In this document: positions 7,711 to 30,785 of the stretch, piece by piece
Layout of the letters: each line of letters opens with the position of its first letter
Position numbering within the stretch: the stretch's first letter is position 1
The notes under the pieces: model-generated
Told to the model about the DNA's origin: nothing
Databases searched by the model: none
The model's input: the letters and a program-made list of their open reading frames with translations, nothing else
Position numbers and translations under genes: made by a program
From: Lepidodermella squamata
Taxonomy: Eukaryota > Animalia > Gastrotricha
Length of the DNA: 64,000 bases
Assembly: GCA_047495785.1 (NCBI GenBank)
Contig: JBLDXI010000013.1
Coordinates: 620,001 to 684,000 of the forward strand
Direction: 5' to 3'

Positions 7711-8291
7711 CTTTCAAGTAATAAATTATCATTATAATCAACATCATGAATTTGAAACCTGAACATTTTTAAAATTTTATCCAGGGGACTGGCGAATACC
7801 CCGCGAGTGGGAATCTAAAATATTTGACGCCAGCGCAACTACCCTAGCCTCAACTGCCGTCAGGCTAAAACGGAATGACAATCACTCACAGAGACTATTT
7901 CCTGAAGATAAAGAAGCAAAGAGCAAACCCATTCATGTACTAGTCGACATCTATTGATATTTAGTAGCCGATTACACTGTTTAGATAAATGCTCCAAATA
8001 GCATTTTAGAGGACTTTCCTTTCCCTTTACAACACCCATACGTTCGTATGAGGAAGTGCGGCGGTTGATTCGTAGATTCGTTCCGCAGTGTCGCCGATAA
8101 ATCAAAAGAGTCAAAAAAGATAGTAGATGCAAATCGGGAGTCAGAAGCAGTGGAAGTCCTCAATGCGCATGCACATCAGAGCTTGACTTGCTATGGATGG
8201 AAGGATGGATTCGTTGCCAAATCGACAGTCGTCCGACAGCTTTTGGGGGCTCTTCAAAAGCTCTTCAAAGTCAGGATCAGGAATTACGATT

Positions 8292-8385
8292 TCTCCTCGC
8301 CCTGACGGACTCAAGCTTTCGCCATAAGGCGGAGCTTGTGAGAAAATCGCGAGCTTACGCTCTAGGAAAGTTTGAACTGGTTTAC
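8292..8385. repeat. Dispersed repeat, copy 1
   Basis: TCTCCTCGCCCTGACGGACTCAAGCTTTCGCCATAAGGCGGAGCT.. nearly identical to the sequence at 22770. Confidence 0.8.
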
Positions 8386-16715: not shown

Positions 16716-19326
16716 ATGTCAAATGCACGATTCCCCTATCTACAAGCGGACGAAGTAGCAAATTTCCCTTCCATTAAACTCGGACTCGATCCTGAAAAGG
16801 AGTTAACATATCGGCAACAGGCCAGCGCTTTCATTCAAGAATTGGGCCAGCGACTTCAGTGGTGAGTTGCAAGAACATCCGATCATCTCTTAAATCATTT
16901 AATAAACAACAGCACACAATGTACAATGAATACTGCTATTGTATACATGCATCGATTTTACTATCTTAACTCGTTCACTAAATTTCATCGAAACGTAAGT
17001 TATAGCTTGATGGACTATGAATATTTAATTTATTATTTCCCAATGCAGACGATGGCTCCTGCTTGTCTCTTCTTGGCCTGCAAAGTAGAGGAGCAACCGC
17101 GAAAAGTCGAACATATAATCAAGGCGGTTTATCGGATTCTATGCAGGGAGAAACAGCCACCCGAGCCAAACACTGAGGTAAAGCGTCCTTATGGATTAGC
17201 ATTCCTCATAGGCTCTGTTCTGGTTGATTTATGTCATAGTAGCCATTGATATTCACATATAGCTACATGATTATGCGCTAGCGGTGTAAATAGGATGCTT
17301 TCGTTTTCGATCTGATTCTTGAACATTTGATTGAGCAAGGCTTGAGCATCTATAGTAAGCGCGTAGTTTCGTCATGTAGCTAATTGTGAGCAAGGCGAAT
17401 TGGCTTGTCTCTTATCAAAATGTACTTTAAAAAAGTTGAACTGATAGGTTAGTCTTCCGCGGCCGATTTCGAATTATAAATTCCACTTGAAGTTACATAA
17501 TTCTGCTTCGATTTCAGGAGTATCTGCAAAAGGCTGAGGAATTGGTTGTGAATGAAAATATACTGTTGCAGACGCTTGGTAATAATTGAAGGTTAAAGCT
17601 TACATGCTATAATCGCCTAGTCCACTTTGGAAAGGCTTTCGCATAATCGTCGATCACCCTCACCCGCACATCGTCCGATATTGCGATCGTGATTTGGCTA
17701 ACAGTGGTCAAGGTTAGAAAAGTTTGAATTTTTATTCAACTCTTATTAATATTGTTTTACAGGTCACAATATCGCTCAAGTTGCGTGGTTCTTGGCGACG
17801 AACAGTTTGCATCTGACAACATTTTGCCTTCAGTATCCTCCGACTGTTATCGCTGCCCTTTGTATTTATCTCTCGTGTAAGTACATTTCTTGCCCTCTTC
17901 AATCGAAATCGAACCAGCCATGGTGGTACGATATCGATCGGAACGCGTCCGAAGAGCTGCTCACCAAGTTGGCCTACGAATTCGTTGCAATTATGGACAA
18001 GGCCCCGACAAAATATAAAACTATCAAGGGGAGTAAAATAGGTTAGCGCTCAGTGATTCTTGCTGGGATGAATACGTGTGTGAATATAACCCATGTTGCC
18101 TATATTACGCAGGTTCAGAGTCTTTGTTAGGTCAAGCTCCTCAAAATTCTGGTGCTCAAAATACGAATGACGATTCGACACCTGCTCAAGTTCGCCCGGA
18201 TGCTGGTAATGTGGATTCGGTAGGGAAAGACAAGCCAGTGAAGGAAGAAGCGGTGGATGAAAAAGCGAAAGGTGCGTCACAGTTTATTTGGAATACATCG
18301 TTAATTATGTTACGCATTTTCAGAAACAGGAAAATCTCATAGATCGGCAACAAATACTGACGATGACGAGCTTTCATCACCTCCTCGCAAGCAGTCGAAG
18401 TTAGGCACTGCGATATCGCTTAAAGATTATAAAGCCAGGAAAGCTACAATGGACCAGCATTCCGGACCAGCTTCAACCAACCCAGGTAGGGCTTTTATGA
18501 AGTTGTTGCAAGTTGAACCATGACATTTATGTCGTAGCGAGCGAATCGCCCAGCGTTGAGCATCGATTAACTGGAAAGGCGCCGTCATCGCCCTCTACGG
18601 TAGACCCTCTCCATCATAAAGTTCCCGCACCTCTTCATGGCTTGCCGATCCTTGAACCCCTTACATTGAGTGCCGAAGAAACAGAGCACAAAGAGTCTTC
18701 AAAAATCTCAAGCCAGCCACACTCAAAGTCTGATTCGCGGCATCCTGAGAAAAGTAAAACCGATGCTGATCGACACCGGTCTCATCATCACCATCGACCT
18801 TCTCACCACGGAAACGAGGAGTCTAAAGCCAGTGCGACCAATCACAGTAGCAGCGCTAGTAATCAAAGTAGCAGCGACCGCCACCATCGTCATCACTTGC
18901 ATCATCGTTCCTCCCATCATCATCATCGAGGCTCCACCGGTGAAAAGCAATCACAACCGCAGGCAGCGGCAAGTGCAATAAAATCTGAAGCAGGGCAGCA
19001 AAATCACGTGCGAAGCTCGCATCACAATGCCGATTCGGAAAATTCAAGTAACAATAGCGCGATAGCTAACGGCAACTCCAAGTCTACGGTATCAGAGACA
19101 GCCGCAACCGTCGACATATCGTCTAAAGTTTCAATCGAAGCATCGATGATGGATGCAAGCCAAATGTACGTACTTTAGCACTACATTATGAGTTTTTCTT
19201 ACATTTATCGCTTCCAGATTATTAGCCACACCTCCGTCACCTTCGTCTACCCAACACGCAGATCTAATGGATGTGAAAAGCGAGCAGGTATCTGCTGCTG
19301 AGAACGCCCCTTCTGCCGTCGTTTAA
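16716..19326 (+). CDS. CCNT: Cyclin T (multi-exon)
   Basis: ELTYRQQAS..NTAIVYMHRFY..LFLACKVEEQPRK..LLQTLGF..DHPH..ATNSLHLTTFCLQY; His-rich C-terminal region. Confidence 0.95.
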
Positions 19327-20502
19327 AATTCGATCGCGCCTACTCCACCGCAGGCCGCCTCGGGTTCGAATAACTATCGATAAAGCACCAGAATAAAATT
19401 GTTTTATCTATCTCGTTAAGATTTGCATCATTTGTTGGTCAGAGTTAACTTTTTGATGTATGTGCGTAAAGCACAAGTGCTAACATTTATAGAAAACTAG
19501 AATTAAAGTCGGATCCTACTGCTGCCCAGAAGATGAATGTCTTGTGGCGTTCATAGCCGATGAAGCTTTGCTCGAGTCGTTTCATGAAGTTACGAATTGA
19601 AGAACTGGCGTTGAATCAATTAATACACATAATACGCTATCTACATTTGTGTTTCGTGATCGATCATTTATAAAACCTAATTTCGCGGCAAGGTACTTGA
19701 CCGCGTCTTGCACACCTGTGAAAATAATGTAAAATATTGAAAGCGTTATTACTGAATACATAGTCTCTTTTAATTCGATGTTGATATGAAATTCTAGAGC
19801 GAATATCTCGACTGAAACCGTCGCCAGTTAAGAAGAAATTGGAGCGTTGATTCAAGTGCGTAGATGATGCGGTTATATTAGAGATCAGCTTGACACGAAG
19901 TCGCGGCTTCTATCTTTCACAACTTTCGCCGCCTCTTTCGCCTTCTTGACTCTTCTCACCGTATATTGAATGATGATGATACTGAAATTGTGAACTCCGC
20001 GTGTACATAGCCTGCGTTACCGTACTCGGCATATTATACATCTCGTATAAACTGGGTAATTCGTCTCAAGGTACAGTATTGCAGGATGTTTAGTGGAGCT
20101 ACACTGCTTGGTGAAAATGAGGTTATTGTCAAAATAAAATAATGATAATTTTTCAACCGATTTTTCGGTTTTATTACTTTCGTCTTAGCGGAGAGAGAAG
20201 TTTTACGGAACTGCAGATTTTATTCAAGTTGCTCAGAATGTTTGAAGTAATCTTGTACCCAAACAATAAAATTCAATATTTGAAAAGCCGATTTACGCAT
20301 AAAAACAATTTTTGTCGCAAGATGGAGTTGAGTGAACTGTATTAACCATACTCATGTCCAAACAGGCAATAGTTTCATTATTCAAATTCACATAATACAT
20401 TTTTCAGTAAGCATTTATTAAAGCACGTAGCATGTAGCAATAATCCACAACAAAACGCCGAGTAGACAGGAAACACGAAGAAACAGCAGATTAGAAGGCC
20501 TT

Positions 20503-21789
20503 TCAGGACTTTCGATGCTTGCTTGGTTGGACCTTTGCCATCAAACCATCCCGATCGAGTCCGTATGCGTCAACTTTAGCTAAGCTATGGTTCTTCCTAA
20601 GGCTGCCTTCGATAAGAAATGTGTTAGGTTCGGCAGAATAGTCGTTTTCGGCCACTTTGATGTCGTTAAAATCCTGATTGATCATATCCCGCAGCGATTC
20701 TTTGGCTTTCAAGGGCTTTGGCAATCCTACTTCTGAACCGTTGTCGATAGCATTCAAGTTGCATTTTTTTAGAAGAACGTTGACATCATCGGCATTCGTG
20801 CGTCGGGAAGTTAATTTGCGAAAAGTAATGACAGGGGTGGTAGATGTCAAGTTCCTGTGGATAAGTTCATGCCTAAATGACAATTCGAAAATGTATGAAA
20901 TTATGAATACGGAAAACGATTTACGTTAGCAGTTCGGCAAGCTGTTTCAGCTCGAATTCGACGTCATCGTCATTCAACTCCACATTGGCAAAGCATTTCC
21001 ACGTAATATCAAGGCTCGAAAGGCCGTCTGTAAGTTCAATCTGGAATTGAAAACGATCATAATTTCAATAAAATAAGTCCGGGCCAAACCCAAGTATATG
21101 ATGATTTAGGAATAATAGCCCGTTATAATGTAAACATGCTCTCGTGCCTTCCCAATCAGCGCCATAACAAATGCATTTCAAGTAATAGGCATCATTTATC
21201 CTCTCAAATCTTAAAGCACGAACACGTTGCTTTTGCATATGCCAAGCCCCATTTTTCCAATAATTTGTAAGACATTGAAAGTTGGACAATAACAATTTAC
21301 TAGAGCCAACCAAAAAATAATAATATTCGTAACTTACATTGTGAATTCCGATCTTATCCTTGCAGTTGAGCTCCTTCAGCGAGTTCAGAGTTGCATCAAT
21401 AACCATATCGCGTAGGGCGAAAGCTACTCTATGGGAGGGTTTTAGAGACAAATGGGGGTTGTCGTCAGCACCAATTACAGACGTTCGCGATGACGACGTC
21501 ATTCGGATTAGGGCAGACTAAATAAAAAACAATGCACTTCATTAGCTCGACGACGAAAACAACTTACGGGGTCATAATTTTCTAGAATAAGAGCACTTCC
21601 TTTTTTCCTAGATGGAATAATTCGAAAAGTTGGCAAGTTGATTGACATTAACTTGGGGAAAAAATACCGGTGAAAGGACAGTTGACTTTGACTTGCCCTT
21701 TGTTTCAGGCGCTGAATGTATTTGTCAGTACACATTCTCGGGGAAGTAGAATAAAACCTGAGGACAGCTCCAAGCGATTTTGTCGTCAT
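20503..21789 (-). CDS. RBFA: Mitochondrial ribosome-binding factor A-like protein (4 exons)
   Basis: N-terminus resembling a mitochondrial targeting peptide (MTTKSLGAVLRFYSTSPRM); spliced IHN|IELTDGLSSLDITW..ELKQLAELL.HELIHRNLTSTTPVITF resembles the RbfA domain. Confidence 0.65.
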
Positions 21790-21793
21790 TTTG

Positions 21794-22222
21794 TTACTGA
21801 TTAATTGTTATCTCCAATACTCTAAGGCCGTTTTCAGACGGATCAGTTATGACTAGGCCTCTGGGAATGTAGATTTTCTCGTTTTGCTCGTTGACGTAAG
21901 ACGCCACCCGTTGCAAACACTTTTCGTAATGAGTATCGATACAAAGATAGAGCAGATAGAAAGTCAAACAAGAGCAGCAGCTTTCACAAAAGGTTGTGCA
22001 ACTGAGTTCCTCGGCCTCTTGGAACAAAGCGTTAATATTTTCTATGGTTTCGAGAAATCTGGGTTCGTCGATATAAGCCTTGAGTTCCCGAGGGAATCTC
22101 TTTTCAAAACGGACACTCAGTCCTTCAGAATAGTCGCGCTGAATGAAGACTTTGTTTGAATTTCGAGAAGCATTAACACTTCCGAGAGGAACGCGCTCGG
22201 GATCACCGCCGACGTTATTCAT
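21794..22222 (-). CDS. GOLGA7: Golgin subfamily A member 7 (Erf4 family), intronless CDS
   Basis: KVFIQRDYSEG..FESCCSCLTFYL..THYEKCL..PRGLVITDPSENGLRVLEI. Confidence 0.95.
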   Translation of the reverse strand: MNNVGGDPERVPLGSVNASRNSNKVFIQRDYSEGLSVRFEKRFPRELKAYIDEPRFLETIENINALFQEAEELSCTTFCESCCSCLTFYLLYLCIDTHYEKCLQRVASYVNEQNEKIYIPRGLVITDPSENGLRVLEITINQ

Positions 22223-22769
22223 AAATAAATATCATAACTTAATAGCTATATCAAAATGAAAGTATGCAGTGGTTAATCAAATTAAACGATAGAAAAAACT
22301 ACATTGGACGTGTTGCTAACAGTTGCTATTTATGGATTTTGCAACAGCATGGAAAACAACACTTGTTGTTCCCCTGCAATCCTGTAAAAAAATTTTCCTA
22401 GGATCAGAACAAGCTATGGATGACTTCCGTCAGGGATGGAAGGACGGATTTCAGACCCTGCCCCCATTTCAGGTGATTTAACTCTTAACAGGGACTGAGT
22501 TGCTGTGGGGAAACGCTTGGAGAGATGACACACCAGAATGCAAAAATAAGCAGCAAAATAAGGATATAATCTAATTGTTATTTGGTCTATTTTCTATTAG
22601 GATGGTATTTGTTGCAAAGGAATCAAATAAAGATGATGATAATAATAATGCTCGCTCGGAAAAGTGCTAATCAAGTTAATGCTGTAGGTGAGCGGCTTTG
22701 CGGCAACAAGACGAACTTCACGATTCACGATCATGATCACGAATTAACGATGTCTCTTGTCTCCTCGCC

Positions 22770-22860
22770 CTGACGGACTCAAGCTTTCGCCGTAAGGCGG
22801 AGCTAGTGAGAAAACGCGAGCTGACGTCTTAAGTAAGTTTGATACGGTTGTTGTAGTCAA
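22770..22860. repeat. Dispersed repeat, copy 2
   Basis: Matches 8292-8385; contains hairpin AGCTTTCGCC-GTAA-GGCGGAGCT. Confidence 0.8.
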
Positions 22861-23744
22861 AACCCGACGGCGAGTTAACAGAGAGTTGAATGTTAACCGT
22901 GGCCATTTTATTCTCGAGTATTTTGCACGTAACTATGCGTCGGGCGTTGGGCGTTGGTTAGATTCACGGGACTTTGGTGGTCTTACACTAACTTCACTTA
23001 CCCCGATTGATCTCGCCACCCTTCCGAAATGGAATAAAAACAACTTCCGCGAAAAGCGAAAGCGAAAAACGAAAACTCGCCCTTTTTAATTTTCCAATTT
23101 TCCAATTTGCGAATTCTTTCTCATACGCTTATAGTATGAATAAAACCGCGATTAATAATGATCTCGGAAAATTTATGATCGAATACTGGTCTTCACATAT
23201 ATATATAGGACTTTTTCAATAAATCTTGTGGGGCGGACCTTATTTTCTCTGGCCTGTCAGTTTTTGGTTGAAGGAGTCGTGCCCGGGTCATTCTGATGGT
23301 AACTCTGTGCTAGATGTCAACAAACACCAAAAGAGAGTGTTTGAGATTTGATGAGCCATCAACACGGGTGCAACACGAACTGGAGCAGAGGCTGACTGCC
23401 ATTGGCTTCTCATGGCTGCTGGTTTCTCAACCGCATCCTTGGTCTGTGTTTAGGGTCCACGTCAAGGATCATCCTCTTTCCATCTTTCCTCACATCAGCC
23501 GTGGCTATTCATTAGCCTCATCAGAGTCGAAAACTTTGATGACAAAGATAACTTCATTATCTGAAATACCGGTTTTGCGGTACTACTAAATCGACGACTC
23601 ATTGCCATCAATCTTTGCGTAACCGTGATGCAAAAGCTTTAATCGGATACCAGCGCTACAGATTCTAGTTTATCGCTAGCTGCTGTTTAATTACACGTGT
23701 TATACTTGTGTTTAATTTTTTAGAAGTTAACGATGACGTGAAAG

Positions 23745-26123
23745 ATGGCATCTGGTAGTCACATAGCCAAAAGCAAAAAGCGGTATGCTGAGGAGAAAAC
23801 TTTGATCTTCGATGTTGAATTATTCCCAAGTACCGACGACTCGTATCCTCAGATATCATATGCTGAAATTTATAAAGCGGAGACTGGGAAATATCCAGGA
23901 AAGCTGGGAAGTGAGCAGTTTCCAACTGATCTAAATGAGCTGGACAGGAAATGGCTTGATGATTTGCAAGATCAAGACCTTGGAGATGGTTACGACGAGG
24001 GTGATAGCTTCATTGACAACACAGAATTGCACAATGACAAGTTGCCTCTTTGTGTGACTACAAAGTATGGTGGATTTTACGTGAATTGCGGATCCTTGAA
24101 GTTGAAGGAAGTCAAACCTGAAGTGCTATTTAAAACTGATAATCCCAGCAAACGACCGCTTAATGAGAAGAAGACGGATAAACCCAAGAAGTTATCTCTT
24201 GATCACCGGCCTAGTGACTTACTTGGAAAGTTGAAGTCGGCTTCGGACCACAATGGAAAGACAGGACTCACAGTCAATCGAAAAAATAGTCTTGTGATAT
24301 CTTCGTCATCTTCTTCTTCGCCCATTGGTGCTGGCATTGTCAATTCATCGTTGAACTCAAGGCCTCAGATACCCGACGTGACTCGGACGTTAAAAACGCA
24401 GCAATCAGTTGATAACGATAACGATAGCGATGACGAAGATGAAGTGTTGAGTCGCTTGGTTTCGACATCTTCAAGTAAAATAGAAACAAAAAAGTTGGAG
24501 CCTGCGATCCCAAATAAGTTGAAAGCGATACCGAAAACTGGCAAGGTGTCTGCCAAAAAGGTTCAAGATCGGCCTCATCCTCTTGCTCATGCGAGCGGTG
24601 GCAACTGCAGTCCGATAGTCAAGCAGGCTCATCGTATGGTGAAGAAGAGCATCAAGGCAAAGATCCAGCAGCAAAATGCACCACGCATTATGCCACAGGA
24701 AGCTGGCGACGTTAAGTCGGCGAAGCGTCCCTGTCTTACGTCTGTGGCAGACCGGGCCAGTAACACAGCAGTGTCTAGTCCATCGCCGGCCTCAATCAGC
24801 GATCCGCCCAGTAATTTGCCTGGCCCTCGAGTAGCCCTTCCGGAAGCCTTACAAGCAGCGGTTGATGCCTTCGAAGCGGAAGCGAAAGTTCGGGTTGCAA
24901 TGTCGGAGCAGAGCTCTCAAGGCTTGAACACTAAGGGAAGCGGGAGCGCCACGGCAGGCGCCAAGAGCAAGCTAGATCTTTTCAATCCTCGTCTCGATGA
25001 TCTCTTACTTCGAATCGTCAAAGAGTCTCGGCAGCATCCTTCGTCAATTCGACACTCCGCTCTGAATTATCTCGCTGAAGTTTTGCCTATTCAGAAAAAA
25101 TCACTGCAGAATCGAATTGCTCGAGTCATTGATCTAGCTCAGAGACAGCAGCTTGACGAACCGATCGGGAAGTTACTGAAAGCCGCAAATTCCCGGAGTT
25201 TTTCCCAACCGTTTGATGCTGATTTAAGAGCTATTCTGACTGAAATTATCAACTTGAGGATTCAACACTATCAGTCGCAATTACACCACCGTGTTACGCT
25301 TGGAACTTTTCTTCGTTCTTATTGCGAAAAGGAACTTAGCGTGGCACTCTCGAAAAGTTCCGCCGCAAACGGAATGCCCCTCAGCAGTGTCGAGGAAACA
25401 ATTGTTAACGAAGTGAGATCTCTATTCCCGAACATTCAAATGCCAACTGCCTCAGTATCTCCGTCTTCACCGGCTCCGAGGGTTAGTCCGGATAGTGCTT
25501 CGGGTAACGACGACATCGGTAACGTGAACACCATTGCAAGTGGTCGTAATTCCTCGGCTGCTAGCAATCACGTTAGTAAACCTCAACCCACAATTCAGGC
25601 AGCGTTCCAACAAGCACAAGCTGCGAAAGCGTCCCAACAGCAACAGCAACCTCCGCCTGCGCCTCCTCCTCTGCCCGCGTCAACTGACTCTACTGTGCTT
25701 CTATCGCCGTCTTTCCATAGCAATTCCACAGCGCAGAAGGATTATGCAAGCTCAAATAAGCCCCAGTCTACTTATGCCGCTCAGCTATCACGAATCACCC
25801 CTACGGTAATGCCGCTTCCTCAATCGGCCGGTGCCATGGACTTTCGAACGTCTTACCAACAGCAACCTCAGCCATCTCCACAACAGCAGCAGCAAGCGAG
25901 GTCGCTGGCGAGTTCGGTTGCCAACTTGCCTTTATACTCTCTCTACCAACATCTTGGCGACCAGCAGAACTTGATGGCAGCAGCCGCTGCTGTAGCCGCA
26001 GCCTCAGCTTCAACGCACTGGCCTCCGAACTCGAATGCGTCGAACACGCCGAACCAGAAGGCGACACCAGCTCATCAACAGCTGCGCTCTCCATTTGATT
26101 ACAGCACTGCTTTCAAGCAATAG
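23745..26123 (+). CDS. UBN: Ubinuclein/yemanuclein (HIRA complex), single coding exon
   Basis: HUN domain GYDEGDSFIDNTE..TTKYGGFYVNCGSL; helical middle domain; low-complexity tail. Confidence 0.9.
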   Translation: MASGSHIAKSKKRYAEEKTLIFDVELFPSTDDSYPQISYAEIYKAETGKYPGKLGSEQFPTDLNELDRKWLDDLQDQDLGDGYDEGDSFIDNTELHNDKLPLCVTTKYGGFYVNCGSLKLKEVKPEVLFKTDNPSKRPLNEKKTDKPKKLSLDHRPSDLLGKLKSASDHNGKTGLTVNRKNSLVISSSSSSSPIGAGIVNSSLNSRPQIPDVTRTLKTQQSVDNDNDSDDEDEVLSRLVSTSSSKIETKKLEPAIPNKLKAIPKTGKVSAKKVQDRPHPLAHASGGNCSPIVKQAHRMVKKSIKAKIQQQNAPRIMPQEAGDVKSAKRPCLTSVADRASNTAVSSPSPASISDPPSNLPGPRVALPEALQAAVDAFEAEAKVRVAMSEQSSQGLNTKGSGSATAGAKSKLDLFNPRLDDLLLRIVKESRQHPSSIRHSALNYLAEVLPIQKKSLQNRIARVIDLAQRQQLDEPIGKLLKAANSRSFSQPFDADLRAILTEIINLRIQHYQSQLHHRVTLGTFLRSYCEKELSVALSKSSAANGMPLSSVEETIVNEVRSLFPNIQMPTASVSPSSPAPRVSPDSASGNDDIGNVNTIASGRNSSAASNHVSKPQPTIQAAFQQAQAAKASQQQQQPPPAPPPLPASTDSTVLLSPSFHSNSTAQKDYASSNKPQSTYAAQLSRITPTVMPLPQSAGAMDFRTSYQQQPQPSPQQQQQARSLASSVANLPLYSLYQHLGDQQNLMAAAAAVAAASASTHWPPNSNASNTPNQKATPAHQQLRSPFDYSTAFKQ

Positions 26124-29325: not shown

Positions 29326-30661
29326 ATGAGTCTGCACCCTTTGGAGGCGGAAAAAGATTTGAGCAGCGTACTGTTAGCCGTTCTCACTCATTTGCAAGCG
29401 GAACATGATAGACTTATGGAAAATGTAGTGAAAAATGACGCCTCAAAGCAGCCGGTGAAATTGGAATTCGTGAAGAATGTGAAATTTTACGAATTATTGG
29501 CGCGATTCACTCAAATCTCGTTATGGATTCCATTTGAACCCCCGCCACCTGTCGTTGAAGCGATTCAGCCGAACAAAAATAAGTGCTCCCACATAGTGTT
29601 GAACCCTTATTTGATGGCGGAGCAAGGCAAGTCGAATGCGCCCAAGCGCAAAAAATCGCCACCGCCCGCTGACATCGGTTGTAAAGTAAAGCGACAATGG
29701 CAGGTTGAACGGAAAGATGTTTTCAACCGCGCCTACAAGGTATCTGTTATTAAAGGCGCTGATTCCTCTGGATATCGGCTATACTCACCTTGTGCCATTG
29801 TTGCGCTGCCATCATTAAAACAATTTGCCGTTTTACACAGTGATAATAAAATTAGCGTAAGTTGAATTGAAGTTGGACGAGTGATTACTGATAATTGCAA
29901 CGTTTTGTTAACAGCTTGTTTGCAGTTCTGGCAAGTTGGAGAGAACTTTTACTATTGTCAACTTTGATTCGAAGCGCCCGAGTTCGAGCTCCCCATGTCT
30001 TCGAGTTGACCATAGAAATCCTAATTATTTGATTGGCATTATCGGTGGACAAATAACATCGATCGGTCCGATTGACGAGGCGATCAAATCTCCTGGAGGA
30101 TTTATCGATTCTAAACCCTTGGTACCTTCTTCCATTTGCTTCGACCAGCCGAGTGGATTGGCTGTTTGCCCTGCTGCTGGACTTCTTTACACAATTATTG
30201 GCAGCGATGTGATTGCGTTCTCACTGGTCCACGGCTCGATGAAGGGGAAATACCCTATAACCTCACCGGTCATATCTTCAAAAGCGTCAGCTCTCGGATT
30301 TTTCAACGGAAGGTTTTATTTTAAGGGAGAAGGCGGTCGCTCGCTCTTTGCGGCGCCTATCGATCACGAAGGCGCCGTTGATCTTGACGCTTTTCGTACG
30401 ATCTCAGCCAACTTCGAAAGTTTACGGGCCATAGATTTCGACGATAACGGCAATATAATTGTTCTGAATAAAGGAACAAATTCAATTGAGGTTTTATCGC
30501 CGAACGGTGGCAGCGCGTTGGCAACGTTCAGCCCTCCGAATACTTACGGCAATTTTTCGCCGGTCGATATCGCCGTTCTTTCTGTGAAATATTCAACTCC
30601 GTCATTTAGCATCGGCGTTGCTGATTGCTTCACCAACAAAATCGCCATTTTTTCATTTTAA
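29326..30661 (+). CDS. Helical N-domain plus NHL-like beta-propeller protein, paralog B
   Basis: LTHLQAEHDRLM; FDQPSGLAV; AIDFDDNGNIIV; same intron position as paralog A. Confidence 0.75.
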
Positions 30662-30785
30662 AACCATTTTACAACTCATGCTTTGTTGTTTTATGCCTTT
30701 TATTTCTCACCGAAACAATAAATTAATAATGGTTATTGATTAATCAACTGATTTTCTGTTCAATATATGTTTAGATGAATCAGTT

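What the first reader, a model, noticed from the sequence alone, without database searches (positions are those of the whole stretch)
21780..21812. GOLGA7 stop and RBFA-like start are only 4 nt apart: candidate bicistronic locus
Seen: the minus strand reads ..ACAATTAATCAG TAA CAAA ATG ACG ACA.., so a complete GOLGA7 CDS is followed 4 nt later, in another frame, by an ATG with A at -3 that opens a mitochondrial-targeting-like peptide. There is no room for a separate 3' UTR and promoter. Inference: either (i) one bicistronic mRNA read by reinitiation or leaky scanning, or (ii) the last GOLGA7 codon (CAG) doubles as a cis/trans-splice acceptor, so that the two products are mutually exclusive. The GOLGA7 CDS is intronless and a likely 5' UTR donor lies upstream (~22301), so it could be spliced out whole.
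Basis: partly seen in the sequence, partly recalled or inferred. Interest (0 to 1): 0.8.

Follow-up and report, generated by a model that had tools for sequence, protein, structure and literature searches.

The report
Conserved two-gene GOLGA7-led messenger RNA
In this small invertebrate genome (probably a gastrotrich), a GOLGA7/Erf4 gene almost free of internal ATG codons ends 4 bases before a second, mitochondrial-looking gene, and the two are most likely carried on one mRNA that ribosomes scan through: a known trick in a new gene pair.

Summary
On the minus strand an intronless Erf4/GOLGA7 ORF (22222-21794, Pfam E=2e-34) stops at TAA. After CAAA, an ATG (21789) opens a second gene that public cDNA contigs show to have five spliced exons.

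One cDNA contig runs unspliced across the stop/start junction into the spliced downstream exons. There is no AATAAA or ATTAAA before the second gene's stop. No spliced-leader or exon-skipping joint was seen.

The 433-nt first cistron holds one internal ATG, against 5-7 expected (P about 0.002). A relative with 77% identical Erf4 and saturated synonymous sites keeps the layout: a 13-nt gap and no internal ATG in 451 nt (P<0.0005).

The Erf4 start has T at -3 and the second start has A at -3. Both species also carry a 6-codon uORF overlapping the Erf4 ATG.

Best reading: a bicistronic mRNA read by leaky scanning, possibly helped by reinitiation after the uORF.

The "RBFA-like" label could not be confirmed in any exon-by-exon test. 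The joined protein model was left out.

Earlier notes of this scan describe several similar pairs in this genome, so this is a new member of a known kind.

The parts
22246..22247 (-). Acceptor-like AG (TTTTGATATAG|C) 23 nt upstream of the Erf4 ATG. It may be a cis- or trans-splice acceptor defining a short leader.
   Evidence: It aligns with TTTTAATAG|G in L001, 25 nt upstream of that species' ATG. No RNA evidence was obtained: X3's contig stops at 22231.
22215..22235 (-). A 6-codon uORF (ATG ATA TTT ATT TAT GAA TAA). It starts 13 nt upstream of the Erf4 ATG, overlaps it and has G at -3.
   Evidence: Read from the sequence. L001 has the same uATG position, length and stop (ATG ACT AGC CTT TAT GAA TAA), and GTTATGA is conserved. 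Whether it lies on the mature mRNA was not shown.
21794..22222 (-). First cistron: intronless Erf4/GOLGA7 ORF of 142 codons. Its start context is TTATTTATGA (T at -3).
   Evidence: Pfam PF10256 E=2.3e-34. It is 77% identical to P0001/L001 with pN 0.13 and pS 0.85. It is single-copy in the genome.
22171..22173 (-). The only internal ATG of the first cistron. It is out of frame with T at -3 and opens an 18-codon ORF ending at 22117.
   Evidence: ATG census: 1 observed against 5.2-7.2 expected, P=0.002-0.003.
21790..21793 (-). The 4-nt inter-ORF spacer CAAA, which places A at -3 of the second start.
   Evidence: L001 has a 13-nt spacer, also with A at -3.
21668..21789 (-). Downstream gene, exon 1 (coding part): ATG and a presequence-like N-terminus.
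   Evidence: X1 record 5 runs from 22066 to 21667 without a break and then splices. The G-A-x-x-R-F-Y-x-T-S motif is conserved with L001.
21568..21607 (-). Downstream gene, exon 2 (40 nt).
   Evidence: cDNA joints 21667/21606 (60-nt intron) and 21568/21517 (50-nt intron), GT..AG on the minus strand.
21338..21517 (-). Downstream gene, exon 3 (60 codons).
   Evidence: cDNA joints in X1 and X3. It is 32% identical to the L001 orthologous exon.
20925..21040 (-). Downstream gene, exon 4.
   Evidence: cDNA joints 21338/21040 (297-nt intron) and 20924/20871 (52-nt intron) in X1 and X3. The intron positions and phases are shared with L001.
20503..20872 (-). Downstream gene, exon 5 coding part, with stop TGA at 20505-20503. 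The five exons add up to 275 codons.
   Evidence: It is 39% identical to L001 exon 4 and single-copy in the genome.
20159..20502 (-). 3' UTR of the unit. AATAAA occurs at 20419, 20224 and 20175, and the probable poly(A) site is near 20159.
   Evidence: These are the first canonical signals on this strand after 22300. The X1 contig covers 20159-20509. Sequence read.

Best explanation
One transcription unit starts in the 1.5-kb divergent intergenic region shared with a ubinuclein gene. It yields a single mature, spliced, polyadenylated mRNA of about 1.6 kb that carries two unrelated ORFs. The first is an intronless Erf4/GOLGA7 cistron. Four nucleotides later comes a five-exon gene for a 275-residue protein with a mitochondrial-presequence-like N-terminus.

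Some scanning 40S subunits start at the Erf4 AUG, which has a poor context (U at -3). The rest pass it and meet almost no other AUG in any frame for 430 nt. They then start at the second AUG, which has A at -3. This is leaky scanning.

A conserved 6-codon uORF overlaps the Erf4 AUG. If it lies on the mRNA, it may carry a further share of ribosomes past the first start and let them reinitiate at the second.

What is shown: the anatomy, the splicing of the second gene, RNA continuity across the junction at contig level, ATG depletion, and conservation in one relative. What is inferred: that one molecule carries both ORFs, that both are translated, and the role of the uORF.
For: (1) The junction and the Erf4 identity are confirmed.

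(2) Runs X1 and X3 derive from RNA. They show four GT-AG joints, no depth in the 297-nt intron or in the upstream intergenic region, poly(A)/poly(T) loose ends and a SMART template-switch oligo. X1 record 5 (556 nt) runs 22066->21667 unbroken over the Erf4 stop and the second ATG. It then continues through two splice joints into the downstream exons. The contigs along the unit have depths of the same order (about 110-420).

(3) There is no AATAAA or ATTAAA on this strand between 22300 and the second stop at 20503. The first lie in the 3' UTR.

(4) ATG census. The window has 1 internal ATG in 433 nt, against 5.2 in synonymous shuffles (P=0.002), 5.9 under other-gene codon usage (P=0.003) and 7.2 by composition. 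L001 has 0 in 451 nt (P<0.0005). Controls: the downstream gene's exons have 10-13 ATG per equal length, an Erf4 ORF with no matching ORF seen after it in the translated scaffold (L003) has 10, and only 0.4% of 430-nt windows here have <=1.

(5) Synonymous sites between the two species are saturated (pS 0.85, pN 0.13). The depletion is therefore maintained independently in each.

(6) Start contexts: T at -3 for Erf4 and A at -3 for the second ORF, in both species.

(7) Both genes are single-copy, so there is no separate monocistronic copy.

(8) The same signature (weak ORF1 context, AUG depletion before ORF2, inter-ORF of about 14 nt) is the experimentally tested mark of leaky-scanning bicistrons in green algae (PMC11892635).
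Against: The RNA evidence consists of assembled contigs, not single reads. A contig across two genes does not prove one molecule, and contigs drop rare isoforms.

The 5' end of the unit was not seen. X1 has no depth above 22171 and X3 stops at 22231.

X1 depth over the 5' half of Erf4 is about half that of the 3' half. This would also fit an internal start site, or 3' bias of the cDNA library.

Conservation rests on one relative only. A 142-codon first cistron is long for this mechanism. Its stop lies upstream of four exon junctions, which in many animals would invite nonsense-mediated decay. No translation data exist.
Confidence: 0.6

Rival explanations
1. There are two overlapping transcripts. 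The second gene is transcribed from its own start site inside or just upstream of the Erf4 coding sequence, so the Erf4 sequence serves as its long ATG-free 5' UTR. Erf4 is translated only from the longer, rarer transcript.
For: X1 depth is about 248 from 22066 downward, about 110 over 22067-22171 and 0 above 22171. The window's only internal ATG (22173) lies just above that point. ATG depletion would equally be required of a long 5' UTR.
Against: X3 has a contig covering 22029-22231, which includes the Erf4 ATG. In L001 the whole cistron, from its first codon, is ATG-free. The depth fall is what a 3'-biased SMART cDNA library gives. The longer transcript would still be bicistronic, so this rival modifies the main reading rather than replacing it.
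Confidence: 0.15
2. The primary transcript is processed at the junction. The AG of the last Erf4 codon (CAG, 21798-21797) accepts a spliced leader or an upstream 5'-UTR donor. This gives a monocistronic mRNA for the second gene, mutually exclusive with Erf4 mRNA.
For: Earlier, unchecked notes of this scan report a spliced-leader RNA and leader-resolved operons in this genome. An AG lies 8 nt before the second ATG. A GT at 22302-22301 could serve as donor.
Against: No joint ending at 21797/21796 and no loose leader sequence at the junction were listed in X1 or X3, and the X1 contig passes straight through. The stretch before the CAG is A-rich (ACAATTAATCAG), unlike the T-rich acceptors of the four confirmed introns. 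L001 has no AG within about 40 nt of its second ATG. No poly(A) signal exists for the upstream gene. Trans-splicing at the junction would not require an ATG-free first cistron.
Confidence: 0.1
3. Termination-reinitiation. Ribosomes that have translated all of Erf4 stay on the mRNA at the TAA and restart at the ATG 4 nt downstream, as on some viral bicistronic RNAs.
For: The stop and start are very close, 4 nt here and 13 nt in L001.
Against: Reinitiation after a 142-codon ORF is inefficient in eukaryotes without a dedicated tethering element. That is established knowledge, not tested here. No UGGGA-type motif is seen in the last 80 nt of either Erf4 ORF. The spacer length and sequence are not conserved. 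This mechanism would not select against ATGs inside the first cistron, yet the depletion is strong in both species.
Confidence: 0.1

Closest known systems
Leaky-scanning bicistronic nuclear mRNAs of green algae (e.g. TOM22 and OST4 loci; PMC11892635)
   Same: A short first ORF has a weak start context. AUG is depleted in all frames up to ORF 2. The inter-ORF spacer is very short (14 nt in the REX1 example). ORF 2 has a good start context. The pairing is conserved across species.
   Different: This locus is in an animal and the gene pair is different. The first cistron is fairly long at 142 codons. All introns lie in the second cistron. A conserved uORF overlaps the first start. Nothing has been tested experimentally here.
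Other candidate bicistronic pairs noted by this scan in the same genome (BRK1-METAP1D, LYRM5-COQ10, POP7-THUMPD2, LAMTOR5-EXOC2, LYRM7-Maf, FMC1-RPP30)
   Same: Each has a small first cistron with few or no internal ATGs, a gap of 4-27 nt, frequent conservation in relatives and often a mitochondrial partner. One note also mentions an overlapping uORF.
   Different: Those are unchecked AI notes on other loci. The gene pair here is different, and its first cistron is among the longer ones.
Spliced-leader operons of nematodes, tunicates and flatworms
   Same: Same-strand genes are packed with no room for a promoter between them, in a genome said (by unchecked notes) to use a spliced leader.
   Different: The upstream gene has no poly(A) signal. 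No usable acceptor is conserved at the junction. The RNA contig is unbroken across it. ATG depletion is not a feature of such operons.
Erf4/GOLGA7 family (PF10256), partner of Erf2/ZDHHC9 palmitoyltransferases
   Same: The first cistron matches the profile over its full length and the Cys-rich core is conserved with a spider orthologue.
   Different: The gene here is intronless, ATG-depleted and followed at once by a second ORF. The spider orthologue has introns and a RAD51D-like neighbour.
Mitochondrial ribosome-binding factor A (RBFA, PF02033)
   Same: By inspection only: an N-terminal presequence-like segment, followed by a stretch whose pattern of hydrophobic and charged residues could fit the helix-strand order of the RbfA KH-like domain.
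   Different: No statistical match was found in any exon-wise test. The same bacterial profile finds human and mouse mitochondrial RBFA at E=1e-7.

Membership tests
Erf4/GOLGA7 (PF10256) | Significant full-length match to the family profile | tested here: met
   E=2.3e-34, 118 bits against a cut-off of 29.3, covering profile positions 2-116 of 116. The sequence is 57% identical to a spider protein named golgin subfamily A member 7.
Leaky-scanning bicistronic mRNA | Both ORFs on one mature mRNA | tested here: inconclusive
   A cDNA contig bridges the junction and continues into spliced downstream exons. There is no poly(A) signal between the ORFs. However, contigs cannot prove a single molecule.
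Leaky-scanning bicistronic mRNA | AUG depletion, in all frames, from the first start to the second | tested here: met
   1 ATG in 433 nt (P=0.002-0.003) and 0 in 451 nt in the relative (P<0.0005). Controls have 10-13.
Leaky-scanning bicistronic mRNA | Weak start context at ORF 1 and favourable context at ORF 2 | tested here: met
   T at -3 for ORF 1 and A at -3 for ORF 2, in both species. This was judged by the general purine-at-minus-3 rule. A consensus specific to this genome was not derived.
Leaky-scanning bicistronic mRNA | Arrangement conserved in related species | tested here: met
   L001 has the same two genes 13 nt apart, three shared intron positions and the same convergent cyclin neighbour. 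It is the only relative found.
Leaky-scanning bicistronic mRNA | Both ORFs translated, with output inversely coupled through the first start | not testable with these tools
   This needs Ribo-seq, proteomics or reporters.
Spliced-leader operon | Poly(A) signal and 3' end of the upstream gene just before the downstream acceptor | tested here: not met
   No AATAAA or ATTAAA between 22300 and 20503 on the minus strand. No poly(A) loose end near the junction.
Spliced-leader operon | Leader-bearing transcripts joined at an acceptor before the downstream ATG | tested here: inconclusive
   None was listed in X1 or X3, and the relative has no AG within about 40 nt. Only contigs were available, and they drop rare forms.
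RBFA (PF02033) | Significant match to the RBFA profile | tested here: not met
   There was no hit exon by exon and none in a six-frame search of the whole genome. My own bacterial RbfA HMM run with filters off gave about 0 bits for every exon. hhalign probabilities were below 1%. The domain would be split over three exons, so this is a weak test.
RBFA (PF02033) | Type-II KH-like alpha/beta fold | not tested
This needs the spliced protein as one chain.
RBFA (PF02033) | Mitochondrial targeting (for the eukaryotic branch) | tested here: inconclusive
   By inspection only. There is no acidic residue in the first 21 residues. The segment is rich in basic and hydroxylated residues. R-F-Y followed by S/H-T-S is conserved with L001. 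No predictor was available.

The most novel reading that the evidence does not exclude
The unit is a three-ORF translational switch. A conserved 6-codon uORF overlaps the Erf4 start codon and diverts a regulated share of ribosomes past Erf4. They then reinitiate, across an ATG-free 430-nt cistron, at the start of a mitochondrial ribosome-assembly-type protein. This would couple the output of a Golgi palmitoylation cofactor inversely to that of a mitochondrial factor. It would be one instance of a genome-wide class of such bicistrons in gastrotrichs, alongside spliced-leader operons.
Probability: 0.2. Interest if true: 0.6.

Novelty: new member of a known kind. Interest (0 to 1): 0.4.

Why it matters
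Animal nuclear genes are normally monocistronic. Conserved cases in which two unrelated full-length proteins share one mRNA by leaky scanning are few, and they have mostly been studied in flies, mammals and green algae.

This locus adds a well-defined example, conserved across saturated synonymous divergence, in a phylum whose published genome paper mentions neither operons nor trans-splicing. Together with the scan's other notes, it suggests that compact gastrotrich genomes use this layout repeatedly.

In practice, gene predictors will tend to mis-annotate such pairs by fusing them, dropping one or inventing a UTR. The locus also offers a simple reporter design for testing start-codon stringency in a spiralian.

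Tried and rejected
(1) Identity of the second protein. None of these gave support:
- Pfam on ORFs and on each exon.
- PF02033 six-frame search of the whole genome.
- PDB phmmer and two-species exon profiles. The best hits were ribosomal protein S3 at E=0.34 and FrzS at E=0.16, which I take as noise.
- ESM Atlas feature search on two exons.
- A profile of the last exon against 1.84 billion representatives, which found only the relative's own ORF, P0003.
- A bacterial RbfA HMM built from 30 genomes and run with filters off.
- hhalign of that alignment against each exon alignment.

The positive control worked: the same bacterial profile finds human and mouse mitochondrial RBFA.

My impression that the motif order resembles human RBFA rests on memory and is not used as evidence.

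(2) More relatives. The exact-protein look-up found nothing. The word search found only P0001 and a spider protein. A metagenome scan found three distant Erf4 loci with no matching downstream gene.

(3) Processed, intronless copies of either gene in the genome: none.

(4) Rfam on the window and on the upstream region: nothing relevant. No tRNA genes either.

(5) Literature. No paper pairs RBFA with GOLGA7 in this sense, and none links gastrotrichs with spliced leaders.

(6) The spliced-leader sequence itself was not recovered. Without further read access it could not have been used.

Left out: joining the five exons into one protein for a family scan or fold prediction, under the operators' binding note.

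Full report
**The observation.** The minus strand reads ...AATCAG TAA CAAA ATG ACG ACA... exactly as described. The upstream ORF (22222-21794, 142 codons, no intron) is a full-length Erf4/GOLGA7 domain protein, with Pfam PF10256 at E=2.3e-34. A DNA contig of run X2 matches 19500-22364 without a difference. A cDNA contig of run X1 covers the junction without an indel. The 4-nt spacing is therefore real.

**The downstream gene.** Runs X1 and X3 derive from RNA. They show GT-AG joints, no depth in the long intron or in the upstream intergenic region, poly(A)/poly(T) loose ends and a SMART template-switch oligo at 21430.

Their joints define four introns on the minus strand:
- 21567-21518 (50 nt);
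- 21337-21041 (297 nt);
- 20924-20873 (52 nt).

The exons are 21789-21668, 21607-21568, 21517-21338, 21040-20925 and 20872-20503. They add up to 275 codons. The 3' UTR carries the first AATAAA signals on this strand (20419, 20224, 20175). An X1 contig begins at 20159, next to the poly(A) end (20156) of a convergent cyclin gene.

Upstream, the next gene is a divergent ubinuclein starting at 23745. Erf4 is therefore the first gene of its unit, with a 1.5-kb promoter region.

**A relative keeps the layout.** The word search found one close Erf4 (P0001, 77% identical) on a 6.35-kb metagenome scaffold, L001. There the intronless Erf4 ORF (136-573) is followed after 13 nt by an ATG (587). That ATG opens the orthologue of the downstream gene.

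Exon identities between the two species are 31-39%. Three intron positions and phases are shared. A convergent cyclin-T-like gene follows. The N-terminal G-A-x-x-R-F-Y-x-T-S motif is conserved, so the ATG at 21789 is the true start rather than a later one.

A spider orthologue has introns and a RAD51D-like neighbour. Three distant metagenomic Erf4 loci show no such partner.

**The key test: ATG depletion.**
- From the Erf4 ATG to the second ATG, the window has a single internal ATG. It is at 22173, out of frame, has T at -3 and opens an 18-codon ORF ending at 22117.
- The expectation is 5.2 under synonymous shuffling (P=0.002), 5.9 under other-gene codon usage (P=0.003) and 7.2 from base composition.
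- L001 has none in 451 nt (P<0.0005).

Controls:
- The downstream gene's exons carry 10-13 ATG per equal length.
- A distant Erf4 ORF with no matching ORF seen after it in the translated scaffold (L003) has 10.
- Only 0.4% of 430-nt windows in this 64-kb window have <=1.

Synonymous sites between the two species are saturated (pS 0.85) while pN is 0.13. Erf4 is therefore under purifying selection as a protein, and the ATG-free state is maintained independently in each lineage.

The Erf4 start has T at -3 in both species and the second start has A at -3 in both. This combination is the tested signature of leaky-scanning bicistrons in green algae (PMC11892635).

**RNA continuity.** X1 record 5 (556 nt) runs 22066->21667 unbroken over the stop, spacer and second ATG. 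It then passes through two splice joints into exon 3. No joint ending at 21797/21796, no leader-like loose end and no poly(A) end were listed at the junction. There is no canonical poly(A) signal anywhere between 22300 and 20503.

These are assembled contigs, so they show that RNA crosses the junction. They do not show that one molecule carries both ORFs. The 5' end of the unit was not seen: X3 stops at 22231, and X1 has no depth above 22171.

**Reading.** The best explanation is a bicistronic mRNA read by leaky scanning (confidence 0.6).

A conserved 6-codon uORF starts 13 nt before the Erf4 ATG and ends just after it. It has G at -3 in both species. It sits behind a conserved acceptor-like TTTT(G/A)ATA(T)AG. 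If it is on the mRNA, it could carry further ribosomes past Erf4 to reinitiate at the second ATG. This is inference.

Rivals:
- An internal start site that makes Erf4 sequence a long 5' UTR (0.15). It fits the lower X1 depth over the 5' half but not the fully ATG-free L001 cistron.
It is not conserved, the acceptor is not T-rich, and no such joint was seen.
- Termination-reinitiation (0.1). It would not explain the ATG depletion.

**The 'RBFA-like' label.** Every exon-wise test failed: Pfam, a six-frame genome search, PDB, Atlas, a 1.84-billion-protein profile search, an RbfA HMM of my own run without filters, and hhalign. The same bacterial profile does find human and mouse mitochondrial RBFA.

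The putative domain is split over three exons, so these tests are weak. The decisive test is to scan or fold the joined product. I therefore call the second product a fast-evolving protein that is probably mitochondrial, of unconfirmed family.

**Context and novelty.** The genome statistics (121.2 Mb, 151 contigs) are close to the published Lepidodermella squamata assembly (122 Mb, 157 contigs). That paper does not mention operons or trans-splicing.

Earlier, unchecked notes of this scan report a spliced-leader RNA, leader operons and several other ATG-free-first-cistron pairs in this genome. Those notes prompted the ATG census, which I ran independently here.

The scan has thus seen this kind of locus before on other DNA. 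This one is a new member (Erf4 plus a mitochondrial-type protein) of a known kind of system.

Noticed in passing
window 22730-22850 (core 22760-22814); another copy at window 8271-8375: A dispersed repeat of about 105-120 nt has at least 40 copies in the genome at 80-89% identity. Its DNA contig depth is about 40 times the single-copy level, and it is also present in cDNA contigs. It has no Rfam or tRNA match. It lies about 520 nt upstream of the Erf4 ATG and is probably a small non-autonomous mobile element.
   Followed up: partly
window 30239-30661 (+): A 140-codon ORF has no internal ATG in any frame and is followed 16 nt later by another ATG that opens only 21 codons before a stop, possibly a short first exon. 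The wider stretch 29718-30692 (+) is also ATG-poor. There is no Pfam match. It could be another first cistron or a long 5' UTR.
   Followed up: partly
window 20156-20159: The poly(A) end of the convergent plus-strand cyclin gene (poly(A) loose end behind 20156 in X3) and the probable 3' end of the Erf4 unit (X1 contig starts at 20159, AATAAA at 20175) lie within a few bases of each other. The two genes terminate back to back with almost no spacer.
   Followed up: partly
window 19708: An X1 cDNA contig (19708-20070) carries a 21-nt poly(T) loose end before 19708. That implies a minus-strand polyadenylated RNA ending there, inside the convergent cyclin gene's 3' region, with no canonical signal within 30 nt. 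It could be a longer 3'-UTR isoform, an antisense RNA or a priming artefact.
   Followed up: no
window 22468-22905 and 23860-24308 (minus strand): Two further 430-nt stretches with at most one ATG lie upstream of the Erf4 unit on the same strand. They could belong to a long ATG-poor 5' exon or be chance. X1 shows no depth over the first stretch outside the dispersed repeat noted above.
   Followed up: no
L001 3415-4104 (-) and window 16926-20156 (+): Synteny extends beyond the pair. In both species a cyclin-T-like gene converges on the 3' end of the second cistron.
   Followed up: partly
window 21729: The 2015 cDNA contig differs from the assembly at one base (T>C on the plus strand) inside exon 1 of the downstream gene. 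This is probably a strain polymorphism.
   Followed up: no
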